Positions 2,531-55,319 of a DNA stretch of 64,000 bases are shown one piece after another. Location: NCBI RefSeq assembly GCF_006345805.1, contig NC_043000.1:12524001-12588000 (forward strand). The letters run 5' to 3'. This stretch comes from Octopus sinensis (taxonomy: Eukaryota). The position numbers were made by a program, and so were the translations under genes. The notes under the pieces are model-generated. The model searched no databases. It worked only from the letters and a program-made list of their open reading frames with translations, and had not been told where the DNA came from. Position 1 is the first letter of the stretch, and each line of letters starts with the position of its first letter.

Positions 2531-3445
2531 GCCTCTTATAGTTGAGTGCAAAGTTGGAGTGAAGTATTAGAGTTCATTATCTAACTCTCACTCACACTCA
2601 CTTTCTTTCAATTTCACCTATGTGTCTATCCATCTACATTACACATACACGACACACACATACATACACACACACATACATACACACACACATACATACA
2701 CATACACATACATACACACACACATACATACACACACACATAAAAATACACATGTGCACACACACACACTAAAATACACATGCACATACACACACACACA
2801 CACACCTCAGTACACATACACACAGAGATGTGCACGAGACACACACACACACAGACAACCCTAAGTACACATGCACACACAGATGTGCACAAGACACACA
2901 CACACGCACCTCAGTACACATACACACACAGACGTGCGCGAGACACACACACACACACACTGTCTGTGTGTCAGTCTCTCAGAGTCGAGAAATGTATGAT
3001 GGGGGGGGGTATAAAGCAGGGAGAGGCGATAGAATAACAACAGTAAGGGAAGGTTGACATCTCCAAACAGCAGCGGCGGCAGCGGCAACAGCAGCAGCAA
3101 CACCATCAACAGCAGCTGCAGCCAGAATAACAGCAGCATCAGCATCAGCAGCAGTCACTGCATCAGTGAATGCAGCATCAAAAAACTGGCAATGTGTCGC
3201 AAATCTTCTCCATGCCTTTCGTCCTCCCTCCCCCTCCCCCCCACGACATGTCCACGAGCAGGATGCTGTAGTTTTCGTTCCGAAACTATTAGAAAGGTGG
3301 CGGTGGTGGTGTGGGAATGGGGTGGTGGAGGGGGTGGGTGTGTGTGTGTGCAAAGAATGTTAGAAGGTGACTGAAGAAACATAAATACACATAAAGTCAG
3401 AGGAAGAAATATAAAGACGAAAATAATAAAGGGGGAAGATGCTGG

Positions 3446-3566
3446 AATAATGATAATAATAATAATAATGATAATAATGATAATGATAATAGTAATAATA
3501 ATAATAATGATAATAATAATAATGATAATGATAATAATGATAATAGTAATAATAATAATAATAATG

Positions 3567-3597
<31 letters not shown>

Positions 3598-3826
3598 TAA
3601 TAATAATAGTAATAATAATAATAATGATAATAATAATAATGATAATGATAATAATAATAATGATAATAATAATAATAATAAGATAATAATAATAATGATA
3701 ATAATAATAATAATAATAATGATAATAATAATAATAATAATGATAATAATAATAATGATAATGATAATAATAATAATGATAATAATAATAATGATAATAA
3801 TAATAATGATAATGATAATAATGATA

Positions 3827-3872
<46 letters not shown>

Positions 3873-4056
3873 TAATAATAATAATAATAATGATAATAGT
3901 AATAATAATAATAATAATGATAATAATAATAATAATGATAATAATAATAATGATAATAATAATGATAATAATAATAATAATAATGATAATAGTAATAATG
4001 ATAATAATAATGATAATAATAATGATAATGATAATAATAATAATGATAATAATGAT
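3446..4056. repeat. (AAT/GAT)n compound microsatellite, ~610 bp
   Basis: Direct reading of the sequence. Confidence 0.95.
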
Positions 4057-4189
4057 AACAGACAAGATGTCTGTAAGAATACGGAAGGGTGGATGGGAGG
4101 AAAGGAGGGAGGAAGAGAGACAAAGACAAACAGAGACAGACAGAAGGAAAACAAAGCAAAAGACAGAAGACACTAGGGAAAGTAATTAA

Positions 4190-4190
4190 C

Positions 4191-4227
<37 letters not shown>

Positions 4228-4469
4228 GCGGTGATGATGGCGGTGATGATGAGAAGAAGAAGAAGAAAAAAGAAGAAGAAGAGGGATGATGATGGTGGTG
4301 GTGGTGGCAGTGATGATGAGAAGAAGAAGAAGAAGGAGGATGATGATGGTGGTGGTGGTGATGGCGGTAGTGGCGGTGATGATGATGATGGTGGTGGTGG
4401 TGGTGGTGATGGCGGTAGTGGCGGTGATGATGATGATGGTGGTGGTGGTGGTGGCGGCGGTAGTGGCGG

Positions 4470-4500
<31 letters not shown>

Positions 4501-4790
4501 GGTGATGATGATGGTGATGATGATGATGGTGGTGGTGGTGATGGTGGTAATGGCGGTAATGATGATGATGATGGTGGTGGTGATGGCGGTGATGATGATG
4601 ATGATGGTGATGGTGGTGGTGATGGCGGTAGTGGCGGTGATGATGATGATGATGGTGGTGGTGATGGCGGTAGTGGCGGTGATGATGATGATGGTGGTGG
4701 TGGTGGTGGTGATGGCGGTGGTGGTGGTGATGGCGGTAGTGGCGGTGATGATGATGATGGTGGTGGTGGTGGTGATGGCGGTAGTGGCGG

Positions 4791-4821
<31 letters not shown>

Positions 4822-4856
4822 GGCGGTAGTGGCGGTGATGATGATGATGATGAGGA
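4190..4856. repeat. (GAT/GGT/GGC)n compound microsatellite with higher-order units
   Basis: Recurring gatggcggtagtggcggt block. Confidence 0.95.
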
Positions 4857-5544
4857 GGAGGAGACCGATGAAGAAATGGATGGAAGGTGAGTATGTAGGC
4901 AAAAGGACAAGGCAACTGAGGAGAGTAAGAATGAGAAAGAAAGTGAATGAGGAGAAAAATAGGAGAGGAAGGAGGAGGTGTGAAGAGAAATCAGTTTGAT
5001 TAAAAAGGAGACAAACGTCAGTAAAATCCAAACTAAATGTGATGAATAGCCATTTTGATAGGAAAGGAAGAATTTATTGATGTGTACTGGCTCATGTAGT
5101 GGAACATTCCATTACAGAACACACACATGCACACACACGCATATACATGTGTAAAGGGACAGGCATGGCTGTGTGGTTAAGAAGTTTGCTTTGCAACTGT
5201 GTAATATCAGGTTCAGTCCCACAATGCAGCGTCTTGGACAAATGTCCTTTTTTCAATATAACCTTGGGTTGACAAATTCCTTGTGTGTGAATTGAGGAAG
5301 ACAGAAACTGAGCGGAAGCTTGATCTGTTGTGTGTGTGGGTGGTGGAGGTGGTGAATGTATGTATGCATGTGGCTGGGTGGTAAAGAAGTTTGCTTCAAA
5401 GCCACATAGTTCCAGGTTCAGTCCCACTGCGTGGCACCTTGGACAAGTGTCTTCTACTACAACCTCAGGCCAATCAAAGCCTTGTGAGTAGATGTGGTAG
5501 ATGGAAACTGAAAGAAGCCTGTTGTGTGTATGTGCATATATATA

Positions 5545-8249: not shown

Positions 8250-8635
8250 CTCTTTCTACTCTTTTACTTGTTTCAGTCATGTGACTGTGGCCATGCTGGA
8301 GCACTGCATTTAGTCGAACAAATCGACCCCAGGACTTATTCTTTGTAAGCCTAGTACTTATTCTATCAGTCTCTTTTGCCGAACAGCTAATGGGGACGTA
8401 AACACACCACCATCGGTTGTCAAGTGATGTTGGGAGGACAAACGCAGACACACAAACACACACACACATATATATACGACTGGCTTCTTTCAGTTTCCGT
8501 CTACCAAATCCACTCACAAGGCTTTGGTTGGCCCAAGGCTATAGTAGAAGACACATGCCCACAGTGCCATGCAATGGGACTGAACCCGGAACCATGTGGT
8601 TCATAAGCAAGCAACTCACCACACAGCCACTCCTA
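8250..8635 (-). mobile_element. tRNA-derived SINE, family B (head, (TA/CA)n linker, tail ending gaaacaagtaaaagag)
   Basis: Reverse complement of gagtggctgtgtggt...ttccgggttcagtccc...gtaaaagagt. Confidence 0.82.
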
Positions 8636-10550: not shown

Positions 10551-10637
10551 CAATTTCTTCTTCTTGGTCCCGTGTACTGGCATTCTTACTCAACCTCTCG
10601 AGGTTCTCAGCCAAATAAGCCTCATTTGATACATGCA
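10551..10637 (-). CDS. ASAP: Internal coding exon (87 bp, phase 1/phase 1) of an ASAP-family ArfGAP (ArfGAP with SH3, ankyrin repeat and PH domains), N-terminal BAR domain
   Basis: Minus strand reads acceptor ttttttattttgcag | TG CAT GTA TCA AAT GAG GCT TAT ... GAA GAA ATT G | gtaaag donor. Peptide (V)HVSNEAYLAENLERLSKNASTRDQEEEI(G) aligns by recall with human ASAP1 DHVQNEENYAQVLDKFGSNFLSRDNPDLG and with the Drosophila Asap equivalent. No neighbouring exons were recognised in the window. Confidence 0.88.
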
Positions 10638-12122: not shown

Positions 12123-12505
12123 TGGAGGCGCAATGGCCCAGTGGTTAGGGCAGCGGACTCGCGGTCACAGGATCGCGGTTTCGATTCCCAGACCGGGCGT
12201 TGTGAGTGTTTATCGAGCGAAAACACCTAAAGCTCCACGAGGCTCCGGCAGGGGATGGTGGTGATCCCTGCTGTACTCTTTCACCACAACTTTCTCTCAC
12301 TCTTACTTCCTGTTTCTGTTGTGCCTGTATTTCAAGGGGCCGGCCTTGTCACTCTCTGTGTCATGCTGAATATCCCCGAGAACTACGTTAAGGGTACACG
12401 TGTCTGTGGAGTGCTCAGCCACTTACACGTTAATTTCACGAGCAGGCTGTTCCGTTGATTCGGATCAACCGGAACCCTCGTCGTAACCGACGGAGTGCTT
12501 CCATC
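12123..12505 (+). mobile_element. tRNA-derived SINE, family C (ggaggcgcaatggcccagtggttagggcagcggactcgcggtc)
   Basis: Clear A/B-box head; related copies at 21852-22232(-), 25415-25690(+), 30952-31253(+) and 55070-55290(-). Confidence 0.82.
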
Positions 12506-12894: not shown

Positions 12895-13122
12895 CTTTTA
12901 CTGATTGCAGTCATTTGACTGCGGCCATGCTGGAGCACCACTTTTAGTTGAACAAAGCAACCCCAGGACTTATTCTGTGTAAGTCTAGTACTTATTCGAT
13001 TGGTCTCTTTTACTGAACTGCTAAGTTACAGGGACATAAACACGCCAACATCAGTTGTCAAGTGATGGTGGGGAGACAAACACAGACACACAAATACATA
13101 CATATAAATATATGTATGTATG

Positions 13123-13172
<50 letters not shown>

Positions 13173-13350
13173 CATACATACATATATATATATGACGGGC
13201 TTCTTTCAGTTTCCATCTACCAAATCCACTCACAAGGATTTGGTCAGCTCAAGGCTATAGTAGAAGACACTTGCTCAAGGTGCCATGCAGTGGGATTGAA
13301 CCTGGAACCATGTGGTTGGGAAGGAAGCTTCTTACCATACAGCCACTCAT
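12895..13350 (-). mobile_element. SINE family B with expanded (TA)n linker
   Basis: Same bipartite structure. Confidence 0.82.
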
Positions 13351-14016
13351 GTGCCTGTATATATATATATATATATATGTGTTCACATATCATCTATCCT
13401 TAATTTCAATGCTAGAGGGAAAAAAAACCTGAGAGACCTTCCAAACCACCACCCTCAACCCCCACCACCACTACCATCTACCACAATCTCCACTACTACC
13501 ATTATCACTACAGTGTCCACTATGAAAACCAGGTAAGTGATTTATTTGCCAGCGGCAAGTCGCCTTAGAAAGAACCTTGCCAACAGGATGAAGGGTTAAT
13601 GAAGATTCAACAAAGAAACTGAATTCTTCCCAAATAGCCGAAAAGGAAGAACTGGGGAAATATTGATTACTTTTGTTGTTGTTGCTGATGTTGTTGTTGT
13701 TGTTTGGAAAAGAGTAGAATATTGATTATGTGTAACCATTCAAAGCAGCACCGGCAGATAGAGCAAACAGCAGCCACAGAAAAACAATGCTACAAGCCAT
13801 AGAAAACAACGCTATTTCCGCATCATAACGGGCTACATACTCATACACACACACATACGCGCACATACAGCATTACACCAGGCCACTTCATATCACACAC
13901 TACATCATGCTGTACCATAAACATATACCACACAATACCATGTAACACTACAGCATACCAGACCAGACCGGACCGGACTAGACCACATAACACTACACTA
14001 TACTGCATCACACATT

Positions 14017-14790
14017 ACCTATTTCTTTATTACCCACAAGGGGCTAAACACAGAGGGGACAAACAAGGACAGACATAGGTATTAAGTCAATTACATCGAA
14101 CCCAGTGCGTAACTGGTACTTAATTTATCGACGCCGAAAGGATGAAAGGCAAAGTCGACCTCGGCGGAATTTGAACTCAGAGACAGACGAACTACCTATT
14201 TCTTTACTACCCACAAGGGGCTAAACATAGAGGGGACAAACAAGGACAGACAGACAGATTAAGTCAATTACATCGAACCCAGTGCGTAACTGGTACTTAA
14301 TTTATCGACCCTGAAAGGATGAAAGGCAAAGTCGACCTCGGCGGAATTTGAACTCAGAGACAGACGAACTACCTATTTCTTTACTACCCACAAGGGGCTA
14401 AACATAGAGGGGACAAACAAGGACAGACAGACAGATTAAGTCAATTACATCGAACCCAGTGCGTAACTGGTACTTAATTTATCGACCCTGAAAGGATGAA
14501 AGGCAAAGTCGACCTCGGCGGAATTTGAACTCAGAGACAGACGAACTACCTATTTCTTTACTACCCACAAGGGGCTAAACATAGAGGGGACAAACAAGGA
14601 CAGACAGACAGATTAAGTCGATTACATTGACCCCAGTGCGTAACTGGTACTTAATTTATCGACGCCGAAAGGATGAAAGGCAAAGTCGACCTCGGCGGAA
14701 TTTGAACTCAGAACGTAGCGGCAGACAAAATATGGCTACGCATTTCACCCGACATGCTAACGTTTCTGCCAGCTCGTTGCTACATCACAA
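14017..14790 (-). repeat. Tandem tetramer of SINE family A (177-bp period)
   Basis: Units start at 14017, 14194, 14371 and 14548; only the last copy retains the tRNA-like head. Confidence 0.9.
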
Positions 14791-14909
14791 ACAACACCAC
14801 ACAGCAACCACACTACTACCACCACCACCACAACATACTATGTTACGCTACGCACTATACTACACAATACCTCCACCACAATACACTGTAAACACATCGC
14901 AAAAGACAA

Positions 14910-15850: not shown

Positions 15851-16175
15851 CTACATGAACCAATGAGAAAGCCTAAGCCAACGAGGAAGTTTCTATGTAA
15901 TCAATGCTTGACAATCAGTGTTGGTTTGTTTACATCCCCATAACTTAGCAGTTCAACAAAAGGGACCAATAGAAAAAGTACCAGACTTATAAAAAAGAAA
16001 TAAGTTATGGGGGTTGATTTGTTTGACGGAAACCTTCAAGGTGGTGCCCCAGGATGGCCACAGTTTAATGACTGAAACAAGTGGAAGATAAAAGATGGCT
16101 ACAATGTCTTTGAACACAGGGATGTTGGACTAGAGATGAAATGAGACTTCAACAACAAAAATGACAACACAATAT

Positions 16176-16410
16176 ACCTATTTCTTTACTGCCCACAAGG
16201 GGCTAAACACAGAGAGGACAAACAAGGACAGACACATGGATTAAGTCAATTACATTGACTCCAGTGCGTAACTGGTACTTATTTAATTGACCCCGAAAGG
16301 ATGAAAGGCAAAGTCGACCTCGGCGGAATTTGAACTCAGAATGTAGCGGCAGATGGAATACCGCTAAGCATTTCGCCCAGCGTGCTAACAATTCTGCCAG
16401 CTTACTGCCT
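16176..16410 (-). mobile_element. SINE family A
   Basis: Full-length reverse copy. Confidence 0.8.
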
Positions 16411-16703
16411 TGACAACACAATATACCACAATCTTGACAAGACACCAGTGTATCACAGGTAATCTCCAGATGACCTGATACTTATTCCTATTGACTGAAG
16501 CAATGTGGAATGAAATGTGGAGAGGTAGCTGTCCTCCTGGTTAGGACACCAACCTATCATATGTAACACTCTTAGATGATTTCCTATTTCTTCTTACTAA
16601 GAGCTAGGTGCCCTACAATAAAGTGTTGTGCTCAAGAAATGAAGAAGACACCTTCATAGGGTTTGATTAGACAACACAAGCCAGCATGAAATTGGACATT
16701 TAA

Positions 16704-16923: not shown

Positions 16924-17635
16924 TTAAAAGTGATGGTGATGAACCTGTGAACAACCAAAATCATAAGGATCATAAAGACAGATCCATAAACTTAAGGATC
17001 ATATAGACATCCATACACTTAGGATCATGAAGACAGATCCATACATAATATGCTACACTGAAGCATATTAAATAGACATGAGACAAATAACGCTTAATCC
17101 CCTTGGTACTGCTGTATTGGTGCCGTCTATTTGGCGCTGCCAATTCGAAGCCGTCATAATTGACATCAGATGTTTTAATGTTTGTCTTACACTCTCTCTT
17201 TCTCTCCTTTCCATTCTCTCTCCCCCTTTCATTCTCTCAATTTCTCTCTCTCTTCCATTCTCAATCTCTCTCTCTCTTTATGCTTGAGAACATATTTTTC
17301 TTTATGTATGAGAAGGAAAGGGTTTATGTCAATCATGTTCAATTAATCAATTGTAATGATTGTCTTTCTTTCTTTCTTTCTTTCTCTCTCTGTTTGCTTG
17401 TGTGGTGTGTGTGTGTGTGTATGAGTGAGTGTGTGTACTTTTGTCTCCAATGCTACAAAAGTACTGTTGCCAAAACAAGCTGAATGTCCAGTTAGCTGTG
17501 CCAAATCCTACGCCCCCAAGTAACAGCACTATATCATCTCATCCTGACCCCTGGGACATGACACTAGCCTATCACAGATAGCTACCCCTGATAAACAAAC
17601 TCCAACACCCAAAACTGCAAGTCAAACAATCACCT

Positions 17636-17867
17636 ATTTCTTTATTGCCCACAAGGGGCTAAACACAGAGAGGACAAACAAGGACAGACAAACGGATTAA
17701 GTTGATTATATTGACCCCAGTGCATAACTGGTATTTATTTAATCAACCCCGAAAGGACGAAAGGCAAAATCGATCTCGGTGGAATTTGAACTCAGAACGT
17801 AGCGGCAGACGAAATACGGCTATGCATTTCACCCAGCATGCTAACATTTCTGCCAGCTCGCCGCCTT
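17636..17867 (-). mobile_element. SINE family A with 17-bp TSD
   Basis: TSD aagtcaaacaatcacct at 17619-17635 and 17868-17884. Confidence 0.88.
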
Positions 17868-18021
17868 AAGTCAAACAATCACCTGTCAATTCAGTACTGC
17901 TACCATTGTCTACTCGAGTTATATACCACTCTGTGGGACCCACTTACAGCTAGGTAGACTGGACTATTGTGGTACCTATTTACAGCTAGGTGGACTGCAC
18001 TGTTCTGTAGTACCTACCACT

Positions 18022-19029: not shown

Positions 19030-19410
19030 ATGTATGGTAGAAATTTTGTGTACGAATAGATATACGACCGTTACTGTTATGTTTAGAGTTCCACGTAGAG
19101 TATCATAATCCTGTCTGCTTCCTGTATAGTTAAGTAACTTCTATACCGAGTAATATTAATTAATGTAGGAGAAATAAGGATAAACATAAATTTATATTAT
19201 ACTTCCTGCGTACGTTTCACAATTGTAGTAGCATTGACGCCCTACGATGGATAATCCAAGTGCAATTATATGCTCACAGACAATAAAGTGTTCCCTGACG
19301 ATCTGTTGGGCTTCAGCATTTAAATAAAGCTCCAAAAAGCCATAATGGTGAAACGCACGTAGGAGGTATATTGTAAACTTGTGTTTATTCTTATTTTCCC
19401 TAAATTACAC
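19030..19410 (+). mobile_element. Non-autonomous Penelope-like terminal-repeat segment carrying a hammerhead and ~60-bp inverted repeats
   Basis: Begins after (TA)n at ~19005-19030. 19161-19220 is an inverted copy of 19348-19407, the hammerhead 3' half plus tail. Confidence 0.55.
19291..19365 (+). ncRNA. Type I hammerhead ribozyme motif with intact catalytic core
   Basis: UUCC (stem I) CUGACGA (19295-19301), long stem II, GAAA (19350-19353), C-GCAC-G, UA with predicted cleavage after A19361, then GGAG (stem I partner). Confidence 0.75.
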
Positions 19411-21184: not shown

Positions 21185-22325
21185 ACAGTGTATAACTGCA
21201 GTAAGTGTACAGAGGGACAGTGTACAGCTGTTGCAGGTACATACAGGGAGACAGTGTAAGCTGCAGTAAGTGTACATAAGGGGACAGTCTATTGATGCAA
21301 TAGGTGTACAGAGAGGTGGTATACAGCTAGTGTACACAGAGGGGTAGTTTACACGTAGTGTACAAGCGTATATAGGATGACAGTGTAAAATTGCAGCAAG
21401 TGTACATAGGGAGACTGTACACCGAGAGGCAGTGTCCAGCTGTTGAAGGTGCATATAGGGAGACAGGATACAACTGCTGTAGGTGTACATAGGGAGACAG
21501 TGTAAAAAAAAGGAGCACTTCGTCGGTTGTGATGACGAGGGTCCCAGCTGATACGATCAACGGAACAGCTTGCTCGTGAAATTAGCGTGCAAGTGGCTGA
21601 GCACTCCACACACACGTGTGTCCTTAACGTAGTTCTCAGAGAGATTCAGCATGACACAGAGTGTGACAAGGCCGGCCCTTTGAAATACAGGTACTACTCA
21701 TTTTTGCCAGCTGAGTGGATTGGAGCAACGTGAAATAAAGTGTCTTGCTCAAGGACACAACACATCACCGGGAATTGAACTCACGACCTTATGATCATGA
21801 GCAGAATGCCCCTAACCACTAAGCCACGCGCCTTCACTAGGGAGACAGAGTGGAAGCACTCCGTCGGTTACGACGATGAGGGTTCCAGTTGATCCGAATC
21901 AACAGAACAGCCTGCTTGTGAAATTAACGTGTAAGTGGCTGAGCACTCCACAGACACGTGCACCCTTAACGTAGTTCTCGGGGAGATTAAGCGTGACACA
22001 GAGAGTGACAAGGCCGACCCCTTGAAATACAGGTACAACAGAAACAGGAAGTAAGAGTGAGAGAAAGTTGTGGTGAAAGAGTACAGTAGGGATCACCACC
22101 ATCCCCTGCCGGAACCTTGTGGAGCTTTAGGTGTTTTCGCTCAATAAACACTCACAACGCCCGGTCTGGGAATCGAAACTGCGATCCTACGACCGCGAGT
22201 CCGTTGCCCTAAACACTGGGCCATTGCGCCTCAGGGAGACAGAGTACAGCTGTAGCAAATATACAATGGAAGTAGGTGTATATAGGGAGACTGTAGAGTT
22301 GCAGTAGGTGTACACAAGCTGGTAA
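21185..22325. repeat. ~36-bp minisatellite interrupted by two SINEs
   Basis: Unit ~gtgtacatagggagacagtgtacagctgttgcag at 21185-21503 and 22233-22325. Confidence 0.75.
21505..22232 (-). mobile_element. Two adjacent SINEs (family D-like 21505-21840; family C 21852-22232) inside a minisatellite
   Basis: agggagacagagt flanks the second SINE at ~21839-21851 and ~22233-22245. Confidence 0.78.
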
Positions 22326-23383
22326 TTTAACTGCTGGAATGCTTGGTGATGCAATACATCCCTGCATCACTGTTGGTTGTAGGAAAAAAAAAAAAACTAA
22401 CGCAGACATTGAGTCAATACAGAGAGAGGCTGAGATTTTCTCACTGAGACATGTATGGTGTGTTTGTAGAAGCTGGATAGTGGTATGTAGAGGAGACAGC
22501 AGTGGTCGGCGGAGAAGAAGGAGAGAGGAGAAAGACGTCAACAGAAGAGAGAAATATAAGAGAGAGAGAGAGAGAGAGTACGTGTGTGTGTGTGTGAGAA
22601 AGAGAGTGTGTATGTGTGAGAGAGAGAAAGAGAGTGTGTATGTGTGTGTGAGAGAGAAAGAGAGTGTGTGTGTGTATGTGTGAGAGAGAGAGAGAGAGAG
22701 TGTGTGTGTGTGTGTGAGAGAGAGAAAGAGTGTGTGTGTGTGTGAGAGAGAGAGTGTGTGTGTGTGTATGTGTGAGAGAGAGAGGAGGTAGACAGGGAAG
22801 TAACAGAGAGGAAGAAAGATAGACATGGAAATAATATTGAAAGAAAAGGATAATAATAATAATAATAATAACAATAATAAACAAAATGAAGAACAAAAGA
22901 GTATGAGAAACGACCTATCATGTTCCACTACCACCACCACTCTGGTATAGCCAGTACCTGCCTTCCTTTATCAACTACCATACTATCCTATCACCACCAC
23001 CATCATCATTATTATCACTATTCCTTAACAACCTCCACCACATCACAATACCACACCTTATCATCATCATCATCACCAGCACCATCAACATACTCTCCAT
23101 AACCATCATGAGTATCACCACCTCTTACAGACAGGAAATTCTACAAGATATCCCAAAATAAATTAAAACAATGAGTTTGTGATCTGCTTCAAGACACTCC
23201 CTGTTGTTGATTATTTTGTTGTACTTGCTGTTGTTATTGTTGTTGTTATTGTTGTTGTGGTGGTGGTGGTGGTGGTAGTGTTACTTTGGTGGAACTCTGC
23301 TCTGTAACTTGGCTCTTTTGAAGACCTGGTGAGAATAAAACCTCCCTCATTTGAAAGACAGGTAATGTTTAGCAACAGGAAGG

Positions 23384-23611
23384 TGAGCTGGCAGAATCGT
23401 TAGCACGCTGAGCAAAATGCTTAGCGGTATTTCGTCTGCCGTTATGTTCTGAGTTCAAATTCCGCCGAGGTCGACTTTGCCTTTCATCCTTTCTAGGTCG
23501 ATTAAATAAGTACCAGTTACACACTGGGGTCGATATAATCGACTTAATCCATTTGTCTGTCCTTGTTTGTCCCCTCTATGTTTAGCCCCTTGTGGGTAGT
23601 AAAGAAATAGG
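23384..23611 (+). mobile_element. SINE family A with 15-bp TSD
   Basis: TSD ttagcaacaggaagg at 23369-23383 and 23612-23626. Confidence 0.88.
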
Positions 23612-24004
23612 TTAGCAACAGGAAGGACATTTGGTCATGAATTACTGTCTCAAATAGATTTTCATCCAACTCATGCTGGTATGGAAAAATAGATATAAAC
23701 CCCAACAAAAAATGATGCAGTATTGTGTGTACTCTCTATATTTTCCAGTCTTTCCATGCTGTTGTTGTTCTTGTTGCTATTATGCATCCCCTCTCCATCA
23801 GGGTTGGCCCTGTCTAAGTTTGCTTCAACAGAGCTAACCTAATAGTTGAAGAGGGGTACATAACAGGGAACATCTAAACCTCTAACTTTTTTCACATCAT
23901 GGACTGGTTTCATACAAGACAATTTTTCTACAGATTGGGGGTTCACACACATAACAGAACACAAGAAAATGCATAATATATAATTCAATTATTGCATATA
24001 TAAT

Positions 24005-27500: not shown

Positions 27501-27870
27501 TGGTGTGGCTGTGTGGTAAGAAGCTTGCTTCCCAACCACATTGGTTCCAGGTTCAGTCCCACTGCATGGCACCTTGGGGAAGTGTCTTTTACTATAGTCT
27601 GAGGGCCAACCAAAGCCTTGTGAGTGAATTTGGTAGATGGAAACTGAAAAAAACCTGTCATATATATATTTATGTGTTTGTCACCCAGCCATCACTTGAC
27701 AACCGATGTTGGTGTGTTTATGTCCCCATAACTTAGTGGTTCGGCAAAAGACACCAATAGAATAAGTACTAGGCTTACAAAGAATAAGTTTTTGGGTCTA
27801 TTTGTTCAACTAAAACCCTTTAAGGTGGTGCTCCAGCATGGCCGCAGTCAAATGACTGAAACAAGTAAAA
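27500..27870 (+). mobile_element. SINE family B
   Basis: Full-length copy. Confidence 0.82.
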
Positions 27871-32949: not shown

Positions 32950-33360
32950 ATTGAAGTAGTAGTAGTGGTGGTGGTGGTGGTGGTGGCAGGATTAATGGTG
33001 GTGGAGATGGTGATGGTGATGGTAGCAACAGCAGTAGTAGTAGTAATAATGGCAGTGGTGGTGGTGGTGGTAGTAGTAGTAGTAGTAGTTGTAGTGGCGG
33101 AGGTGGTGGTGGTAGCAATGGTGGTGATAGTATTGGTGGTAGTAGTACTAGTAGTGGCAGAGGTGGTGGTAGTAGTAGTAGTAGTGGCGGAGGTGGTGGT
33201 GATAGTATTAGTAGTAGTATGGTGGTAGTAGTACTAGTAGTGGCAGAGGTGGTGGTGGTGGTGGTAGTAGTAGTAGTGGCGGAGGTGGTGGTGGTAGCAG
33301 TAGTAGTAGTAGTGGTAGAGGTGGTGGTGGTAGCAGCAGCAGCAGCAGTAGTAGTAGTTT
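32950..33360. repeat. (GTG/GTA)n compound microsatellite
   Basis: Direct reading of the sequence. Confidence 0.9.
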
Positions 33361-33715: not shown

Positions 33716-34535
33716 TAAATGATGTAAGAGTGGAGGCGCATGGCTTAGTGGTTAGGGTGTCAGCATCATGGCATCATGATCGTAAGATTGTGGTTTCGAT
33801 CCCTGGACCAGGCGACGCGTTGTGTTCTTGAGCAAAACACTTCATTTCATGTTGCTCCAGTCCACTCAGCTGGCAAAAATGAGTAACGCTGCGATGGACT
33901 GGCGTCCTGTCCAGCTGGGGAACACATACGCCATTGAAACCGGGCCCATGAGCCTGGCTAGGTTTTAAAAGGGTGCATTTATTTATTATTATTAAATGAT
34001 GTGAGAGTGGAGGTGCGTGGCTTAGTGGTTAGGGTGTCAGCATCATAATCGTAAGATTGTGGTTTTGATTCCTGGACCAGGCGACGCGCTGTATTATTGC
34101 ACAAAACACTTCATTTCACATTGCCCCAATCCACTCAGCTGGCAAAAATGAGTAACGCTGCGATGGACTGGCGTCCCGTCCAGCTGGGGAACACATATGC
34201 CATTGAAACCGGGCCCATGAGCCTGGCTAGGCTTTAAAAGGGCGCATTTATTTATTATTATTAAATGATGTGAGAGTGGAGGTGCGTGGCTTAGTGGTTA
34301 GGGTGTCAGCATCATGATCGTAAGATTGTGGTTTCGATCCCTGGACTTGGCGACGCGCTGTATTCTTGCACAAAACACTTCATTTCATGTTGCTCCTGTC
34401 CACTCAGCTGGCAAAAATGAGTAACGCTGCAATGGACTGGGGAACACATACGCCATTGAAACCGGGAAACCGGGCCCATGAGCCTGGCTAAGCTTTAAAA
34501 GGGCGCATTTATTTATGTATCTTAAATGATGTAAG
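33716..34535 (+). repeat. Tandem trimer of SINE family D (~272-bp period)
   Basis: Each unit begins taaatgatgt(a/g)agagtggagg; the array is closed by taaatgatgtaag at ~34523. Confidence 0.88.
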
Positions 34536-35119
34536 CATCAGCAATAACAACAACAACACACACACACAGAGGCACATGCATGTGCACAACTACCTCAGAT
34601 GCCATTTGCAAGGGGATGCAAGAATCACAAAATGGATTCTTTGAGCTGAGCCAATCGGCAAGAGACCTAGAGGGAAACCAAGAATGAGATGGCTGGATAA
34701 TAATATCCATAGTTTTAGCTGGTCATGTTTGGAAATCCAGCCACAAAGTGTAATGATGTATGCTTCTGAAAGGATCTTGATGACGAGGTGCCTGAGGACT
34801 TTGCCCCAATAATCCTCCTAGGATTAATGATCAGTGAGGACAATGGACGGATGGTTTTATGGCAGTGGCCATAATGGGATTGTTGCATTTGACAGATTAG
34901 TGTCTTACCTAGAGGAAAATATCTTTCTTTGGTTGTGTAGTAAGAATTTGCTTCTCAACTACATAGTTCCAGGTTCAGCCCCACTGATGGCACTTTGTGC
35001 AAACATCTTCTATAGTCTTGCTCCAACCGAAGCCTTGTAAGTGGATTTGGTAATGGAAAGTGAAAGGAACCTGTTGTATACACACACACACAAATATATA
35101 TCTATATATATATATATAA

Positions 35120-35460
35120 TCAAAATAAGCAACAATAATATCTTCGGTAATTTGGTACGATCGTTTCACGCTACATCATTTTATTAAATATTGTAAATAT
35201 TACAACAGTTTTAAAATGTTGAGCAATCATCAGCCATTTATAGAGGTTTTCCATTAATACATAATTTTCATATTAATTGATAACATTATAGAGAAGGTAG
35301 ATATATAGACAAAGATGTCGATTTGAATTTTAAGAACATTAAGGTAGTAGAGTTTATCTTATGACTGAAGAATATTCTTTAAGTTATTTTGAACTGCTAG
35401 AAGGTTGTGAAGTACATTCAGTTGAAAGGAAACAAAAGAGATTTTCTATTCATAGAAATA
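35120..35460 (-). mobile_element. Solo Penelope-like terminal-repeat segment (hammerhead-bearing) inserted in the (TA)n linker of a SINE
   Basis: Flanked by (TA)n on both sides. SINE head at 34925-35095 and its tail at 35520-35740 are separated by this segment. Confidence 0.6.
35152..35237 (-). ncRNA. Type I hammerhead ribozyme motif with intact catalytic core
   Basis: Minus strand: UGG CUGAUGA UUGCU...AGCGU GAAA C GAUC G UA CCA. 3-bp stem I, palindromic stem III (ACGAUCGU), GUA cleavage triplet at plus 35156-35158. Confidence 0.78.
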
Positions 35461-38400
35461 TATATATATATATCTCTTATTATAAAGATAGATAGATAGA
35501 TAGATGGATGGATGGATGGATATATGTGTGCGTGTCTTTGTATCTGTGTTTGTCCACCTACACTGCTTGACAACTGGCGTTGGTGGATTTACATCCTCAT
35601 AACATAGCAGTTTGGCAAAAGAGATTGATAGAATAAGTACTAGGTTTAAAAACGAAAAAAAAAGTACAAGGCCAATTCATTTGACTAGAAGTCCTTGAAG
35701 GCAGTGTCCCAGCATGGCTACAGTCTAATGACTGAAACACCATAGAACTGCAGCCAAACATTGGTTTTTAGTGAGTCTTAATTAAACATGCAAAATTTTT
35801 TTTTAATAAACACACGAACAAGTCCTCAGTGACTGAAAGTATGCTTGAAATATTTGTTGATCACTCCCGAGATATTCAAAGCTATTTATGACATCAAAGC
35901 TGTAGTGAAACGAACTTGAATAAACTGAATTTGTCGTCTCATTAGTAATAATTACCCCTTAATTTTTGAAATATTTGTTTACATTTCAGTTCAAATAATG
36001 TAAATCACACTTCTAAGATGAAGAGCCGTTCCACTGAAGTCGGTCGTTGTATAGACAGATCTTTGATATGCTTCCTACACAAATAGACTGCAGCTGCAGA
36101 TAAGAGAGCTAATAGCATTCTTAGAATAACAACAACTATCATAAGTGCAGGCTACAAGCACAATGGTTGAAATTATCTGAAGAAACAAAGAAGAACAAGA
36201 ACAAGAAGAAGCAAGAAATGAAAATACTCTCCAGGTTTGTTTATAATTACGGTAAGGACCCACACCTAAAATGTTGAAATATTGTGTAGGGGACCAAATT
36301 TCATTAAGGATCAAATTCTTGTTGAAAATGTAATGTAGAAAGCAAAGCCATTAAGAAGTGAGAGTTATGGGTGCTACCATAAAAGAACTGTCATACGAGA
36401 ACATGCTAAAAGGGTGATTAATGGGGTGGATTTTTGTTCGGTAAATTTTTGCTAGCTTACTTTCTTTTTAATGCATCATGCAACATGCATGCATGCACAC
36501 ACACACATGCATACAGACATATGTACACACATTTGTACACTATGATTAAGCAGTGGTGATGATGATGATGATGATGATGATGGCGATGGTGATAATAGTG
36601 ATGGAGCCGGTGGTGACGTCGGTGGTGCTAGTGTTGATGAGGGTGGTAGTGGATGGGGTGGAAGTTGATGATGATGATGGGTGGGGGTTGATGATGGCAG
36701 GGTGGGGTGGGCTGGGGAGGTTGGTGACAGGATGGGGGTTGATGATGGCAGGATGGTGAGGATGTTGATTGGTGATAGGAGTAATGGTGGTGGTGGTGAC
36801 AATGAAGATGATGATGATGATGATGATGTGTGTGTGTGTGTGCGAGAGAGAAAGAGAGAGAGGGAGGGAGGGAGAGACCAACAGACAGACAGATAAACAT
36901 ACAGACAGACAAAGAGAGAGCATAAGCAATGTTGAAAGGGCTAGAACTCCAGACAGCATCAATTCTTGTGGAATATATTTGTAGGAACCACGAGAAGTGC
37001 AACAAGGAGATAAATGCAAGGAAGTCGAAGATACCCACCACCACTACCATCACCGCCACCACTACCATCACCACCACCACCACCACCACAAAAAATATTT
37101 TTAAAAACTGCTTCAACCGCTGAAGCATGACTCCCTACAGGAGACAAAATCTCCCTTGAACTGTTTTACAGTTGTAAATTAGTTACCACATAGTGGGGGG
37201 TAAATAAATAATAATAATAATAATAATAAAGTGTGGTTGTTACTGCACCACATGTGTAGTGTATGTGGTGTGGATATGCTCTACAGAACATAACACTGCA
37301 CTGGCAAATGTCTCGGTGCCCCACCCCCGCCTTCCACCCCCCCTGCCTCACTAGAACGAGAAACCAGCTTGATGGCTTCTTGAAATAAGCACTTTTAAAT
37401 AGAGGTGTGCAAGGGCTTAAAGAGGGTAGACTGGGAAAGAGCCTGCTGATACTCTAATGGGAGGTTGAATGCCACAACTAATCCTTACTTAATCCGTGGA
37501 TATATTGACAAAAGTAGGGTTGGTATTGTCGCTGTTTAGAACCTTTCCCAGACAGGTTCTGATCAAGCCGATTTATATTTAGGGTTAGGGTTAGGTATTC
37601 CGGTCTTGGTCATTCTATCTGTTTTAGAGTTATGCACAACACAGGCATGGTTGTAAGGTTAAGAAGCTTGCTTTGCAACCATGTGGTTTTGAGTTCAGTC
37701 CTCGGGAAAGTGTCTTCTACTATAGCCCCAAGCTGATCAATGATTTGTGTGAGAGAATTTGGTTGATGGAAACCGTATGGAGGCCCATCATTTATTATAT
37801 ACATGTGTGTATGTGTCTATTTGTGTCTGTGTGACCCCCACCTCCCACCGATGAAAAACCAGTGTTGGTTTGTTTTAAGTCCTTGTGACTTAGCAGTTTA
37901 AGAAAAGAGACCAATAGAATGTGTAAAAGATTTAAAAAATAAGTGCTGGGGATTATTTGTTGTTCCAGCATAGCCATAGTCCAATGATTACGGTATGATA
38001 GTGTGTTCATGTGTGAGACACAGAGAGAGATGGGGGACAGACAGACAGACAGAAAGAAAGAAAAATGCAGGACAGAATTGCAGAAATATAGACAGTCTTG
38101 AGTGAGCAAGACTTGAGAAGTTCCTTACTTTCTTTCCTGTTTGCTTGTTTGCTGGTATGATAGGGATCAGTCAAAATGCTTGGACACTGACTTAAGGACT
38201 TTACAACTTCTGAGGAATTAAAAATATTTCCTTGGTAACCAGAAATGTGGCACCAATGAATTCGGAAACCTGATCTTCAACACTGCCAACACTGTTGTTA
38301 ACAATTCTCTCTATGATAGGCGCAAGACCTGAAATTTTGATGGGAGAAGTTTGGTTGATTACATCAACCCCAGTACTTAACTGGTACTTATTTTCATCAA

Positions 38401-40957: not shown

Positions 40958-41153
40958 GTGTGTGTGTGTGTGTGTGAGGTGAGACAGCATGTATTGTTTC
41001 AGTGTTACTGCACATATATAAACACACACAAACACATACACACACAGTTTTTATGCTCCACCCTGCCCCACCACGGTATCCCAAGGAAGTTTAAGAGCAG
41101 GGACGGTTTAAACACGCTTTAAACAAAGACAAAAATATTCGTCTGTCATGACC

Positions 41154-41555
41154 ACCTATTTCTTTACTACCCACAAGGGGCTAAACACAGAGGGGACAAA
41201 CAAGGACAGAAAAACGGATTAAGTCGATTACATTGACCCCAGTGCGTAACTGGTACTTATTTAATCGACCCCGAAAGGATGAAAGGCAAAGTCGACCTCG
41301 GCGGAATTTGAACTCAGAACGTAACGGCAGACGAAATACCTATTTCTTTATTACCCACAAGGGGCTAAACACAGAGGGGACAAACAAGGACAGAAAAACG
41401 GATTAAGTCGATTACATTGACCCCAGTGCGTAACTGGTACTTATTTAATCGACCCCGAAAGGATGAAAGGCAAAGTCGACCTCGGTGGAATTTGAACTCA
41501 GAACGTAGTGGCAGACGAAATACCACTAAGCAATTCGCTCGGCGTGCTAACGGTT
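41154..41555 (-). repeat. Tandem dimer of SINE family A (~184-bp period)
   Basis: Units at 41154 and 41338; flanked by tcatgaccacc duplication. Confidence 0.85.
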
Positions 41556-42009
41556 CATGACCACCACCACCACCACCACCACTACTACCTCCACCACCAT
41601 CATCAACAACACCATCATTAACACCACCATCACCACCAGTACAGCCACCACCATCATTAACCATCACCATCACCACCATCAACATCATCATCATTTATAG
41701 CATCCGTTTTTCCATGCTGGTATGTGTTGGACAACATATACACAGCGTCTTGTAGAGTTTTGTATATCCTTGATATATAGTGCTAGTATAACAGTATATA
41801 CAATAAGAAATGTATGAAAGTTGTGTGACGTCATGAATATGCTTGTGTATAGAAATCCTACGCAAGATGTCTAATATTAAACATATATTTAGTTTTACTG
41901 TAAAAATATAACCTGCGGAAAAACCACTGGGGTTTCGAGAGCTGAGAGAGGAGAGTGTCCAACTGGTTTGATATTTATTAATTCTCATCAGAGAGTATTG
42001 ATATATACA

Positions 42010-44227: not shown

Positions 44228-44648
44228 CTCTTTTACTCTTTACTCTTTTACTTGTTTCAGTCATTTGACTGCGGCCATGCTGGAGCACTGCCTTTAATCG
44301 AGCAAATCGACCCCGGGACTTATTCTTTTGTAAGCCCAGTACTTATTCTATCGGTCTCTTTTGCCGAACCGCTAAGTAACAGGGACATAAGCACACCAGC
44401 ATCGGCTGTCAAGCAATGCTAGGGGGACAAACACAGACACACAAACACACACACACGCACATATATATATATATATACATATATACGACGGGCTTCTTTC
44501 AGTTTCCATCTACCAAATCCACTCACAAGGCTTTGGTCGGCCCGAGGCTATAGTAGAAGACACTTGCCCAAGGTGCCATGCAGTGGGACTGAACCCGGAA
44601 CCAAGTGGTTGGTAAACAAGCTACTTACCACACAGCCACCCCTGCGCC
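44228..44648 (-). mobile_element. SINE family B (low divergence, CpG-rich)
   Basis: Full-length reverse copy. Confidence 0.85.
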
Positions 44649-46267: not shown

Positions 46268-46690
46268 ACCACGCACACCTACTCTTTTACTTGTTTCAGT
46301 CATTTGACTGTGGCCATGCTGGAGCACCGCCTTTAGTCGAGCAAATTGACCCCAGGACTTATTCTTTGTAAGCCTAGTATTTATTCTATCGGTCTCTTTA
46401 GCCGAACCGCTAAGTTACAGGGACATAAACACACCAGCATCGGTTGTCAAGCAATGCTAGGGGGACAAACACAGACACACAAACACACACATACATATAT
46501 ATATATATGTACATATATACGACAGGCTTCTTTCAGTTTCTGTCTACCAAATCCACTCACAAGGCTTTGGTCAGCCCGGGGCTATAGTAGAAGACACTTG
46601 CCCAAGGTGCCACACAGTGCAATTGAACCTGGAACCATGTGGTTGGAAAGCAAGCTTCTTACCACACAGCCACACCAGGCGCCTACGCAT
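46268..46690 (-). mobile_element. SINE family B
   Basis: Full-length reverse copy. Confidence 0.82.
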
Positions 46691-54995: not shown

Positions 54996-55319
54996 TTTCC
55001 CGCTAACTACTTGATAAATTCTTATATCGCTGGTCACAATACGCTTCACATTGTTTTAGCCTTCAAATGATGCCACCCCGCTGGCTAAGCGAGCAGGCCA
55101 ACAGAAGAAAGAGTGAGAGAAAGTTGTGGCGAAAGAGTACAGCAGGGATCGCCACCACCCCCTGCTGGAGCCTCACGGAGCTTTAGGTGTTTTCGCTCAA
55201 TAAACACTCACAATGCCCGGTCTGGGAATCGAAACCGCGATCCTACGACCGCGAGTCCGCTGCCCTAACCGCTAGACCATTGCGCCTCCACATGTGTGAA
55301 TATATGTTTATGTGTAAAA

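What the first reader, a model, noticed from the sequence alone, without database searches (positions are those of the whole stretch)
35152..35237. Intact hammerhead ribozyme in the sense orientation of the ASAP pre-mRNA intron
Seen: on the minus strand, the same strand as the ASAP exon, all invariant type I hammerhead nucleotides are present (C3U4G5A6U7G8A9, G12A13A14A15.1, C15.2-G16.2, U16.1, A17). It has a 3-bp stem I, a self-complementary stem III (ACGAUCGU) and an extended stem II opening with a U.U pair. Known: minimal hammerheads with palindromic stem III are typical of Penelope-like element terminal repeats and usually cleave as dimers; intronic hammerheads occur in some vertebrate genes. 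Inference: every ASAP transcript would carry a potentially self-cleaving site ~24.5 kb upstream of the BAR exon, which could affect nascent RNA processing.
Basis: partly seen in the sequence, partly recalled or inferred. Interest (0 to 1): 0.8.

Follow-up and report, generated by a model that had tools for sequence, protein, structure and literature searches.

The report
Transposon-borne hammerhead motif in ASAP intron
The hammerhead ribozyme motif is really there, in the sense strand of an ASAP intron, but it is most likely a lone leftover of a Penelope-like retrotransposon that cannot fold or pair up well enough to cut the gene's RNA.

Summary
The motif exists exactly as described at 35237..35152 (-). 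It has the full hammerhead core, a 3-bp stem I, a long stem II opening with U.U, the palindromic stem III ACGAUCGU, and A17 at 35156.

Taken alone it is weak: about 0.05-0.06 such matches per window arise by chance, no Rfam hammerhead model reports it, and the conserved G10.1-C11.1 pair is missing. It is nevertheless not a chance match. A second motif at 19291..19365 (+) shares an identical 14-nt box, GUGAAACGNNCGUA, which appeared in 0 of 100 shuffles. None of 291 simulated chance hits has a palindromic stem III or resembles it that closely.

Both motifs lie 30-46 nt from the 3' end of short inserts bounded by microsatellites. One insert splits a SINE at its (TA)n tract. The other has an inverted truncated copy beside it. 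These are hallmarks of 5'-truncated Penelope-like elements.

The ASAP context was confirmed with tools. The 87-nt BAR exon (10551-10637, -) is conserved in other species, and the preceding exon lies outside the window, so the motif is intronic and in the sense orientation.

As a single copy it has no dimer partner, and the predicted occupancy of the hammerhead fold is about 1e-4. Cleavage of ASAP pre-mRNA is therefore unlikely. I class it as a new member of a known kind, of modest interest.

The parts
35152..35237 (-). Hammerhead-type motif HH35. Stem I 5' strand 35236-35234; core CUGAUGA 35233-35227; helix II hairpin 35226-35168; GAA 35167-35165; palindromic helix III ACGAUCGU 35164-35157; A17 at 35156 (predicted cleavage 35156|35155); stem I 3' strand 35155-35153.
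   Evidence: Sequence; descriptor hit; helix II hairpin z = -3.44; no Rfam hammerhead hit.
35127..35457 (-). AT-rich insert of about 331 bp that carries HH35 30-36 nt from its 3' end. Most likely a 5'-truncated copy of a hammerhead-bearing retroelement (a Penelope-like element or a derivative). No other copy in the window.
   Evidence: Self-BLAST and alignment with intact SINE copies; no internal repeats; whole-insert fold z = -0.29.
34930..35126 (+). 5' half of a SINE-like repeat of about 390 bp, ending in its central (CA)n/(TA)n microsatellite. This is the target split by the insert.
   Evidence: Matches 46672-46491, 44638-44461, 8610-8473, 27506-27664 and others.
35458..35739 (+). (TA)n plus (ATAG)n(ATGG)n microsatellite, followed by the 3' half of the same SINE-like repeat.
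   Evidence: Matches 46500-46292, 44455-44253, 8473-8269 and 27673-27863, where the two halves are contiguous.
19291..19365 (+). Second motif of the same family, HH19: UUCC CUGACGA U|CUGUUGG...CCAUAAUGG|U GAAAC GCAC GUA GGAG. It is antisense to ASAP and lies 46 nt from the end of its unit, which abuts a (CA)n tract.
   Evidence: Descriptor hit; shares the exact box GTGAAACGNNCGTA with HH35; no other homology.
19161..19224 (-). Inverted, 5'-truncated copy (81% identical, 64 nt) of the 3' half of HH19 plus its tail (19344-19407). It contains GTGAAACGTACGCA.
10551..10637 (-). 87-nt coding exon of an ASAP-family gene (BAR domain; peptide HVSNEAYLAENLERLSKNASTRDQEEEI). It has a polypyrimidine-CAG acceptor and a G|GTAAAG donor.
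   Evidence: The upstream conserved exon is absent from the window.

Best explanation
HH35 is a genuine member of the minimal, dimer-type class of type I hammerhead motifs that metazoan Penelope-like retroelements and their non-autonomous derivatives carry near their 3' ends.

Shown:
- The full catalytic core and three possible helices are present.
- A second, independently diverged copy in the same window shares only the hammerhead boxes.
- Both copies sit 30-46 nt from the 3' end of short inserts bounded by microsatellites.
- The HH35 insert splits a SINE at its (TA)n tract.
- HH19 has an adjacent inverted truncated copy.
- HH35 lies in the sense strand of an ASAP intron longer than 53 kb.

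Inferred:
- A retroelement RNA was reverse-transcribed from its 3' end into a (TA)n target and truncated at the 5' end, leaving about 331 bp that include the ribozyme.
- In the parent element, tandem copies pair through the palindromic ACGAUCGU to build a long intermolecular helix III, then cleave after A17.
- In this solitary copy no partner is available. Stem I (3 bp) and stem III (2 bp) are too weak, and a competing fold is about 5 kcal/mol more stable.
- The motif is therefore a passenger fossil that cleaves ASAP pre-mRNA little or not at all.
For: Sequence evidence:
- Core and helices are present.
- There are two descriptor hits against an expectation of 0.05-0.06.
- The identical 14-nt box GTGAAACGNNCGTA occurs at both loci and in none of 100 shuffles.
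- Of 291 chance hits, none has a palindromic helix III and none is as similar to HH35 as HH19 is.
- Of 55 metagenome matches to the two boxes, none also has both helices.
- There is no homology between the two loci outside the boxes. This is the pattern Cervera and de la Pena describe for hammerheads of Penelope-like elements (PMC4209133).

Context evidence:
- The insert splits a SINE at its (TA)n tract.
- An inverted truncated copy lies next to HH19.
- The literature reports a (TA)n target bias, hammerheads near the 3' end, 30-40-bp tails and inverted 5'-truncated copies for these elements (PMC8557442; PMC11167929).
- A U.U pair at the base of helix II, with a 2-bp helix III and tetraloop, occurs in the active axolotl HHR_Amex2 (PMC7229834).

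Evidence for weak activity:
- The probability of the hammerhead fold is about 1e-4.
- Dimerisation in trans gains only -6 kcal/mol.
- Hammerheads of Penelope-like elements cleave poorly even as dimers (PMC6765202).
Against: - No RT or GIY-YIG coding sequence is attached, and none was found among the ten large ORFs scanned (chosen from the largest, passing over overlapping and repeat-encoded ones).
- The canonical features of hammerheads from Penelope-like elements are missing: the G10.1-C11.1 pair, a bulged nucleotide after A9, and a compact 6-8-bp helix II. Helix II here spans 48-59 nt.
- No canonical minimal hammerhead occurs in the window.
- No Rfam hammerhead model reports either locus, even at E <= 10.
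- The family rests on two full copies plus one fragment, because no genome of this organism could be searched.
- The helix III of HH19 is not a perfect palindrome.
Confidence: 0.62

Rival explanations
1. Chance match. The hammerhead consensus arose fortuitously in AT-rich intronic repeat DNA, and the second locus is an unrelated coincidence.
For: The loose descriptor gives 0.05-0.06 hits per 64-kb window, which means thousands in a genome of gigabase size. No Rfam hit was found. The helices are weak and rich in G.U pairs, and G10.1-C11.1 is missing. The MFE fold is not a hammerhead.
Against: The second locus shares an exact 14-nt box not seen in any of 100 shuffles. None of 291 null hits is palindromic or as similar. 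None of 55 box-only matches in metagenomes carries the helices. The helix II hairpin has z = -3.4. Both loci share the same position relative to the end of an insert and a microsatellite.
Confidence: 0.12
2. A real repeat family, but not a ribozyme. The shared boxes are terminal motifs of some other transposon, for example the terminal inverted repeats of a MITE of about 247 bp at 19161-19407. On this view the resemblance to a hammerhead is incidental.
For: The 3' box of HH19 lies inside a 64-nt inverted repeat whose arms are 119 nt apart, which is MITE-like. No RT or endonuclease remnant was found.
Against: HH35 has no terminal inverted repeat. Between the two loci only the hammerhead boxes are conserved, and both helices are kept by different sequences. 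Inverted 5'-truncated copies are also typical of Penelope-like elements.
Confidence: 0.12
3. An active, possibly co-opted, intronic ribozyme that cleaves nascent ASAP pre-mRNA and influences its processing.
For: The core is intact, and the motif lies in the sense strand inside a long intron of a conserved gene. HHR_Amex2, which has the same U.U pair, shows 22% monomer cleavage in 1 h. Intronic hammerheads are known in amniotes (reference 22 of PMC7229834).
Against: The copy is single and no sense partner exists. The probability of the hammerhead fold is about 1e-4. There is no closed loop 1, so no tertiary contacts are possible. The motif sits inside a recent-looking insertion within a SINE, not in a conserved block. 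Retrozymes are depleted from introns in Xenopus, which suggests that active copies in genes are selected against.
Confidence: 0.05
4. An intronic C/D-box snoRNA. UGAUGA would serve as the C box, with a terminal stem.
For: Weak matches, driven by sequence alone, to snR51, snR54 and ceN108 at 14-16 bits with E of 3.6-10. The length of 86 nt and the sense intronic position would fit.
Against: The scores are far below the gathering thresholds of 44-50 bits. No CUGA D box lies next to the terminal stem: the sequence there is GUGA, followed by 10 nt before CCA. The twin locus is antisense to the gene.
Confidence: 0.02

Closest known systems
Minimal hammerheads (min-HHRs) of Penelope-like elements (Cervera and de la Pena 2014, PMC4209133; Lunse et al. 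2017, cited in PMC6765202)
   Same: Type I topology, a short stem I, and a very short palindromic helix III that implies action as a dimer. Extreme divergence outside the core. Mostly solitary truncated copies, located near the 3' end of the element. Microsatellite targets and adjacent inverted truncated copies.
   Different: U10.1.U11.1 replaces the conserved G10.1-C11.1. There is no bulged nucleotide between A9 and 10.1. Helix II spans 48-59 nt rather than 6-8 bp with a small loop. No RT or GIY-YIG ORF is attached.
Type I hammerheads of metazoan non-LTR retrozymes, especially axolotl HHR_Amex2 (de la Pena et al. 2020, PMC7229834)
   Same: A U.U mismatch at the base of helix II, a 2-bp helix III capped by a tetraloop, and a unit size of about 330-350 nt.
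   Different: Retrozymes are tandem arrays with loop 1-loop 2 contacts and strongly structured circular RNAs. Here the copy is single, stem I is open, and the insert has no fold energy above background (z = -0.29).
[quoted passage not shown]
   Same: A sense-strand type I hammerhead inside an intron of a protein-coding gene.
   Different: Those are compact, canonical and ultraconserved, have tertiary loop contacts, and are active as monomers. This motif is not recognised by any Rfam hammerhead model and lies inside a transposon insertion.
Newt satellite 2 and Schistosoma Sm-alpha hammerheads
   Same: A short helix III with a palindromic loop, the double-hammerhead mechanism, and carriage by a repeat.
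   Different: Those occur in tandem or SINE-like arrays with many near-identical copies and canonical helix II.

Membership tests
Hammerhead ribozyme (type I) | Conserved core C3 U4 G5 A6 N7 G8 A9 / G12 A13 A14 / A15.1-U16.1 / H17 in the correct order | tested here: met
   CUGAUGA ... GAAA ... U A, with A17 at 35156.
Hammerhead ribozyme (type I) | Three helices around the core, with stem I open | tested here: inconclusive
   Stems of 3 bp (I), 4 bp after the U.U pair plus an extended hairpin (II) and 2 bp (III) can be drawn. The MFE fold differs, and the probability of the hammerhead fold is about 1e-4.
Hammerhead ribozyme (type I) | G10.1-C11.1 pair at the base of helix II (highly conserved) | tested here: not met
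   U.U at 35226/35168. A precedent exists in HHR_Amex2.
Hammerhead ribozyme (type I) | Score above threshold against the Rfam hammerhead covariance models | tested here: not met
   No hammerhead family was reported at gathering score or at E <= 10, even on a 121-nt slice. The 59-nt helix II probably costs most of the score.
Hammerhead ribozyme (type I) | Mg2+-dependent self-cleavage 3' of H17 | not testable with these tools
   Needs in vitro transcription and cleavage assays.
Minimal hammerhead of Penelope-like elements | Palindromic 15.2-16.2 pair and loop 3 (dimer-forming helix III) | tested here: met
   ACGAUCGU is fully self-complementary, with a duplex energy of -10 kcal/mol. None of 291 chance hits has this feature. 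HH19 manages only 6 of 8 pairs.
Minimal hammerhead of Penelope-like elements | Extra nucleotide between A9 and 10.1, and a compact 6-8-bp helix II | tested here: not met
   No register gives a bulge plus a paired 10.1-11.1. Helix II spans 59 nt.
Minimal hammerhead of Penelope-like elements | Location in the pseudo-LTR or 3' end of an element encoding RT and a GIY-YIG endonuclease | tested here: inconclusive
   The insert is only about 331 bp and has no ORF. Its position 30-36 nt from the 3' end, its (TA)n target and the inverted truncated copy at the twin locus all fit.
Minimal hammerhead of Penelope-like elements | Multi-copy consensus families with covariation in the helices | tested here: inconclusive
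   Only two full copies and one fragment are available. They share the boxes, and stems I and II are kept by different sequences. No genome of the organism could be searched.
Metazoan non-LTR retrozyme | Tandem repeats of 170-400 bp, each with a type I hammerhead | tested here: not met
   No tandem array at the locus; single copy in the window.
C/D-box snoRNA | C box RUGAUGA and D box CUGA brought together by a terminal stem | tested here: not met
   A C-box-like UGAUGA is present, but no CUGA lies next to the stem. Rfam snoRNA scores are 14-16 bits against thresholds of 44-50.

The most novel reading that the evidence does not exclude
A solitary hammerhead derived from a Penelope-like element, with an unusual U10.1.U11.1 pair and a helix II of about 50-60 nt, may be catalytically competent in vivo. 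This could happen with help from chaperones, or through pairing in trans with transcripts of sister copies. It would then cut nascent ASAP pre-mRNA inside a >53-kb intron, acting as a built-in brake on transcription or processing of a conserved Arf-GAP gene in a cephalopod-like genome.
Probability: 0.04. Interest if true: 0.7.

Novelty: new member of a known kind. Interest (0 to 1): 0.3.

Why it matters
Hammerheads carried by transposons are known to litter metazoan genomes, so one more truncated copy is ordinary.

Two features are mildly useful:
- The core is intact but has a U.U pair at the base of helix II and a very long helix II. If genome-wide copies confirm this, the descriptors used to count such ribozymes would need widening, since neither Rfam nor the canonical minimal-hammerhead descriptor finds it.
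- The copy lies in the sense strand of an intron of a conserved gene. Recent work in Xenopus reports depletion of retrozymes from introns, so this copy is a natural test of whether solitary dimer-type hammerheads are harmless to host transcripts.

Tried and rejected
- Rfam at gathering score and at E <= 10 on 601-, 121- and 111-nt slices gave no hammerhead hit. This is not decisive, because helix II is so long.
- A canonical minimal-hammerhead descriptor and the U3-A8 variant found nothing in the window.
- Homology between the two inserts outside the core was sought by local alignment against shuffles. None was found, nor between their tails.
- Pfam on ten large ORFs of the window (chosen from the largest, passing over overlapping and repeat-encoded ones) found no RT, endonuclease or other domain.
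- Several attempts to reach the organism's genome failed. Word-indexed protein searches with the exon and with a SINE ORF found nothing. Three exact-ORF look-ups found nothing. Family-wide copy analysis and orthologous-intron conservation were therefore impossible.
- The orthologous contigs that were eventually found are too distant: only the exon aligns.
- The metagenome pattern scan returned only chance or coding matches. I used it as a negative control.
- My first attempt to verify the ASAP exon used a human ASAP1 sequence recalled from memory and gave E = 20, which is noise. It was replaced by the phmmer, PDB and contig evidence.
- Pfam did not recognise the short exon peptides.
- Helitron-type ends (5'-TC ... 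CTRR-3') were checked by eye on the insert. No CTRR end was found.
- The snoRNA reading was rejected because there is no D box.
- ARAGORN found no tRNA in the SINE heads.

Full report
**Observation**

On the minus strand the window reads 5'-AUGG CUGAUGA U UGCU...(helix II, 59 nt from U10.1 to U11.1)...AGCG U GAAAC GAUC GUA CCAA-3'. The coordinates are:
- C3-A9 at 35233-35227.
- G12-A14 at 35167-35165.
- The self-complementary ACGAUCGU at 35164-35157.
- A17 at 35156.
- Stem I, UGG/CCA.

**Is it more than chance?**

Taken alone, hardly. It gives:
- 0.057 hits per window in 300 dinucleotide shuffles.
- 0.059 with 540 permuted decoy cores on the real sequence.
- 0.052 per 128 kb in 720 Mb of Markov sequence.

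That amounts to thousands of chance hits in a genome of gigabase size. Other points also count against it:
- Rfam reports no hammerhead family at gathering score over the whole window, nor at E <= 10 on slices of 601 and 121 nt.
- The minimum-free-energy fold is not a hammerhead and is not unusually stable (z = -1.5).

The same descriptor, however, finds one more hit in the window, at 19295-19361 on the plus strand: UUCC CUGACGA U CUGUUGG...CCAUAAUGG U GAAAC GCAC GUA GGAG. The two loci share far more than the descriptor demands:
- Both have U.U at the base of helix II.
- Both contain the exact 14-nt box GUGAAACGNNCGUA. It occurs twice in the window and never in 100 shuffles. My rough estimate from base frequencies is about 0.007 per window.
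- Of 291 simulated chance hits, none has a self-complementary helix III, and none resembles HH35 as closely as HH19 does.

As a reverse control, I scanned public metagenomes for the two boxes at the same spacing. This returned 55 matches, about the number expected by chance, including a cluster from one conserved coding gene. None has both stem I and stem II. Outside the boxes the two loci show no detectable similarity. Conserved boxes, helices kept by different sequences and unrelated surroundings are what Cervera and de la Pena describe for hammerheads of Penelope-like elements (PMC4209133). I conclude that this is a real family of hammerhead type, not a coincidence.

**Context**

Self-BLAST and alignment show that 34930-35118 and 35520-35739 are the two halves of a SINE-like repeat of about 390 bp. 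Intact copies of this repeat lie at 8269-8610, 44253-44638, 46292-46672 and 27506-27863. At this locus the repeat is split at its central (TA)n microsatellite by about 331 bp of unique AT-rich sequence (35127-35457). Read in the sense of the motif, the hammerhead lies 30-36 nt from the 3' end of that insert.

At the second locus:
- The unit ends 46 nt after A17, against a (CA)n tract.
- Its last 64 nt, which include the GAAAC box, are repeated in inverted orientation 119 nt upstream (81% identical, 19161-19224).

The literature reports the following for Penelope-like elements, with the insertion features drawn largely from the Naiad/Chlamys clades, which lack canonical hammerheads (PMC8557442; PMC11167929; PMC4209133):
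- An insertion bias for microsatellites, notably (TA)n.
- Hammerheads near the 3' end.
- 30-40-bp tails.
- Adjacent inverted 5'-truncated copies.
- A majority of solitary truncated copies.

The insert is not part of a tandem array and is not unusually structured as a whole (z = -0.29). This argues against a retrozyme unit. The helix II hairpin itself is unusually stable (z = -3.44). No RT or endonuclease domain was found among the ten large ORFs scanned, as expected for so short a fragment. Assignment to Penelope-like elements therefore remains an inference.

**Gene context**

The candidate exon at 10551-10637 (-) has a polypyrimidine-CAG acceptor and a G|GTAAAG donor. The evidence that it is a real ASAP exon is as follows:
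- A phmmer search of its 30-residue peptide against 1.84 billion representative proteins found two short ORF products that are 67-70% identical (E = 3e-4 to 9e-4).
- The contigs that encode them, and a third contig, keep the same 87-nt exon with the same splice junctions, and similarity stops at those junctions.
- A related peptide from the same family matches residues 69-117 of ASAP3 in PDB 9jih_A (E = 1.3e-4).
- One orthologous contig carries ORFs with ArfGap, Ank and SH3 domains downstream on the same strand.

The exon is therefore an ASAP BAR-domain exon on the minus strand. The preceding exon (LDxDRxGLTKMKKSVKALYSSG) is 86% identical between two of the other species but has no match anywhere in the window. 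The intron upstream of the BAR exon therefore extends beyond coordinate 64000. It is longer than 53 kb and contains HH35 in the sense orientation and HH19 in the antisense orientation.

**Will it cut?**

Forcing the hammerhead secondary structure costs about 5 kcal/mol relative to the ensemble. This gives an occupancy of about 1e-4, with or without flanking sequence. The competing fold pairs GAUGAUU of the core with the helix III strand.

As a monomer, stem III is only 2 bp with a GAUC loop. Stem I is 3 bp (-1.6 kcal/mol) and open, so no loop 1-loop 2 contact can form. Two molecules can form the 8-bp intermolecular helix III (-10 kcal/mol). The net gain from dimerising is only -6 kcal/mol, which corresponds to roughly 60 uM. 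That is far above any plausible concentration of an intron, and no second sense copy exists in the window.

Published data point the same way:
- Minimal hammerheads of Penelope-like elements show no monomer cleavage and only low activity as dimers.
- The axolotl HHR_Amex2 also has a U.U pair at the base of helix II and a 2-bp helix III with a tetraloop. It cleaves 22% in an hour as a monomer, but it has loop contacts.
- Retrozymes are depleted from Xenopus introns, which suggests that active copies inside genes are removed by selection.

I therefore expect little or no cleavage of ASAP pre-mRNA. This is a prediction, not a measurement.

**Comparison and novelty**

The motif works like, and most probably is, a minimal type I hammerhead of the Penelope-like-element or retrozyme class. 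It departs from the published consensus in its U.U base pair and its very long helix II, and neither Rfam nor the canonical descriptor finds it.

With only two copies and one fragment available, I cannot tell whether this is a distinct variant family. I therefore file it as a new member of a known kind. The rivals, with my estimated probabilities, are:
- Pure chance, about 0.12.
- A non-ribozyme transposon motif, about 0.12.
- An active intronic ribozyme, about 0.05.
- A C/D-box snoRNA, about 0.02.

The decisive data are a genome-wide copy analysis and a cleavage assay, neither of which was possible here.

Noticed in passing
window 19291-19365 (+) and 19161-19224 (-): A second hammerhead-type motif of the same family, antisense to ASAP, with an inverted 64-nt truncated copy of its 3' half 119 nt upstream.
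   Followed up: yes
window 34930-35739; copies at 8269-8610, 12975-13355, 27506-27863, 44253-44638, 46292-46672 and others: An abundant SINE-like repeat of about 390 bp with a tRNA-like head and an internal (TA)n(GT)n microsatellite, present in at least 12 copies in the window. ARAGORN calls no tRNA in it.
   Followed up: partly
window 33716-34532: A 269-bp unit repeated three times in tandem (88% matches) whose consensus starts with a tRNA-like SINE head. It carries no hammerhead boxes.
   Followed up: partly
window 14016-14846, with related copies at 16175-16474, 17632-17878 and 41153-41636: A 177-bp tandem array (about 4 units, 96-97% identical), with dispersed and inverted relatives of the same SINE-like family, for example at 23357-23612.
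   Followed up: no
window 3329-4915 and 33033-33358: Long imperfect trinucleotide microsatellites, (GAT/GGT/AAT)n and (AGT/GGT)n. They create spurious ORFs of up to 586 aa on both strands and a strong local GC skew.
   Followed up: no
window 12125-12484 and 21873-22232: A pair of 360-nt inverted repeats, 95% complementary and 9.4 kb apart. They bracket the region that contains HH19. A third copy lies at 55104-55291.
   Followed up: no
L057 (ENA ERZ26695794 ctg424408), L056 (Logan ERR14368248), L055, L058: Contigs from metagenome or run assemblies that carry the orthologous ASAP exon. L057 also has ArfGap, Ank and SH3 ORFs within 9 kb, so that organism has a far more compact ASAP gene. These appear to be animal host DNA inside metagenome assemblies.
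   Followed up: partly
L002, L003, L005, L007, L015, L036, L044, L052 and others (metagenome loci): Thirteen of the 55 metagenome matches to the two-box pattern have exactly the same 77-nt spacing and a conserved context (TCCTTGCTGATGAT...GGTGAAACGTTCGTAATGGCC). This looks like one conserved bacterial coding gene and is unrelated to hammerheads.
   Followed up: no
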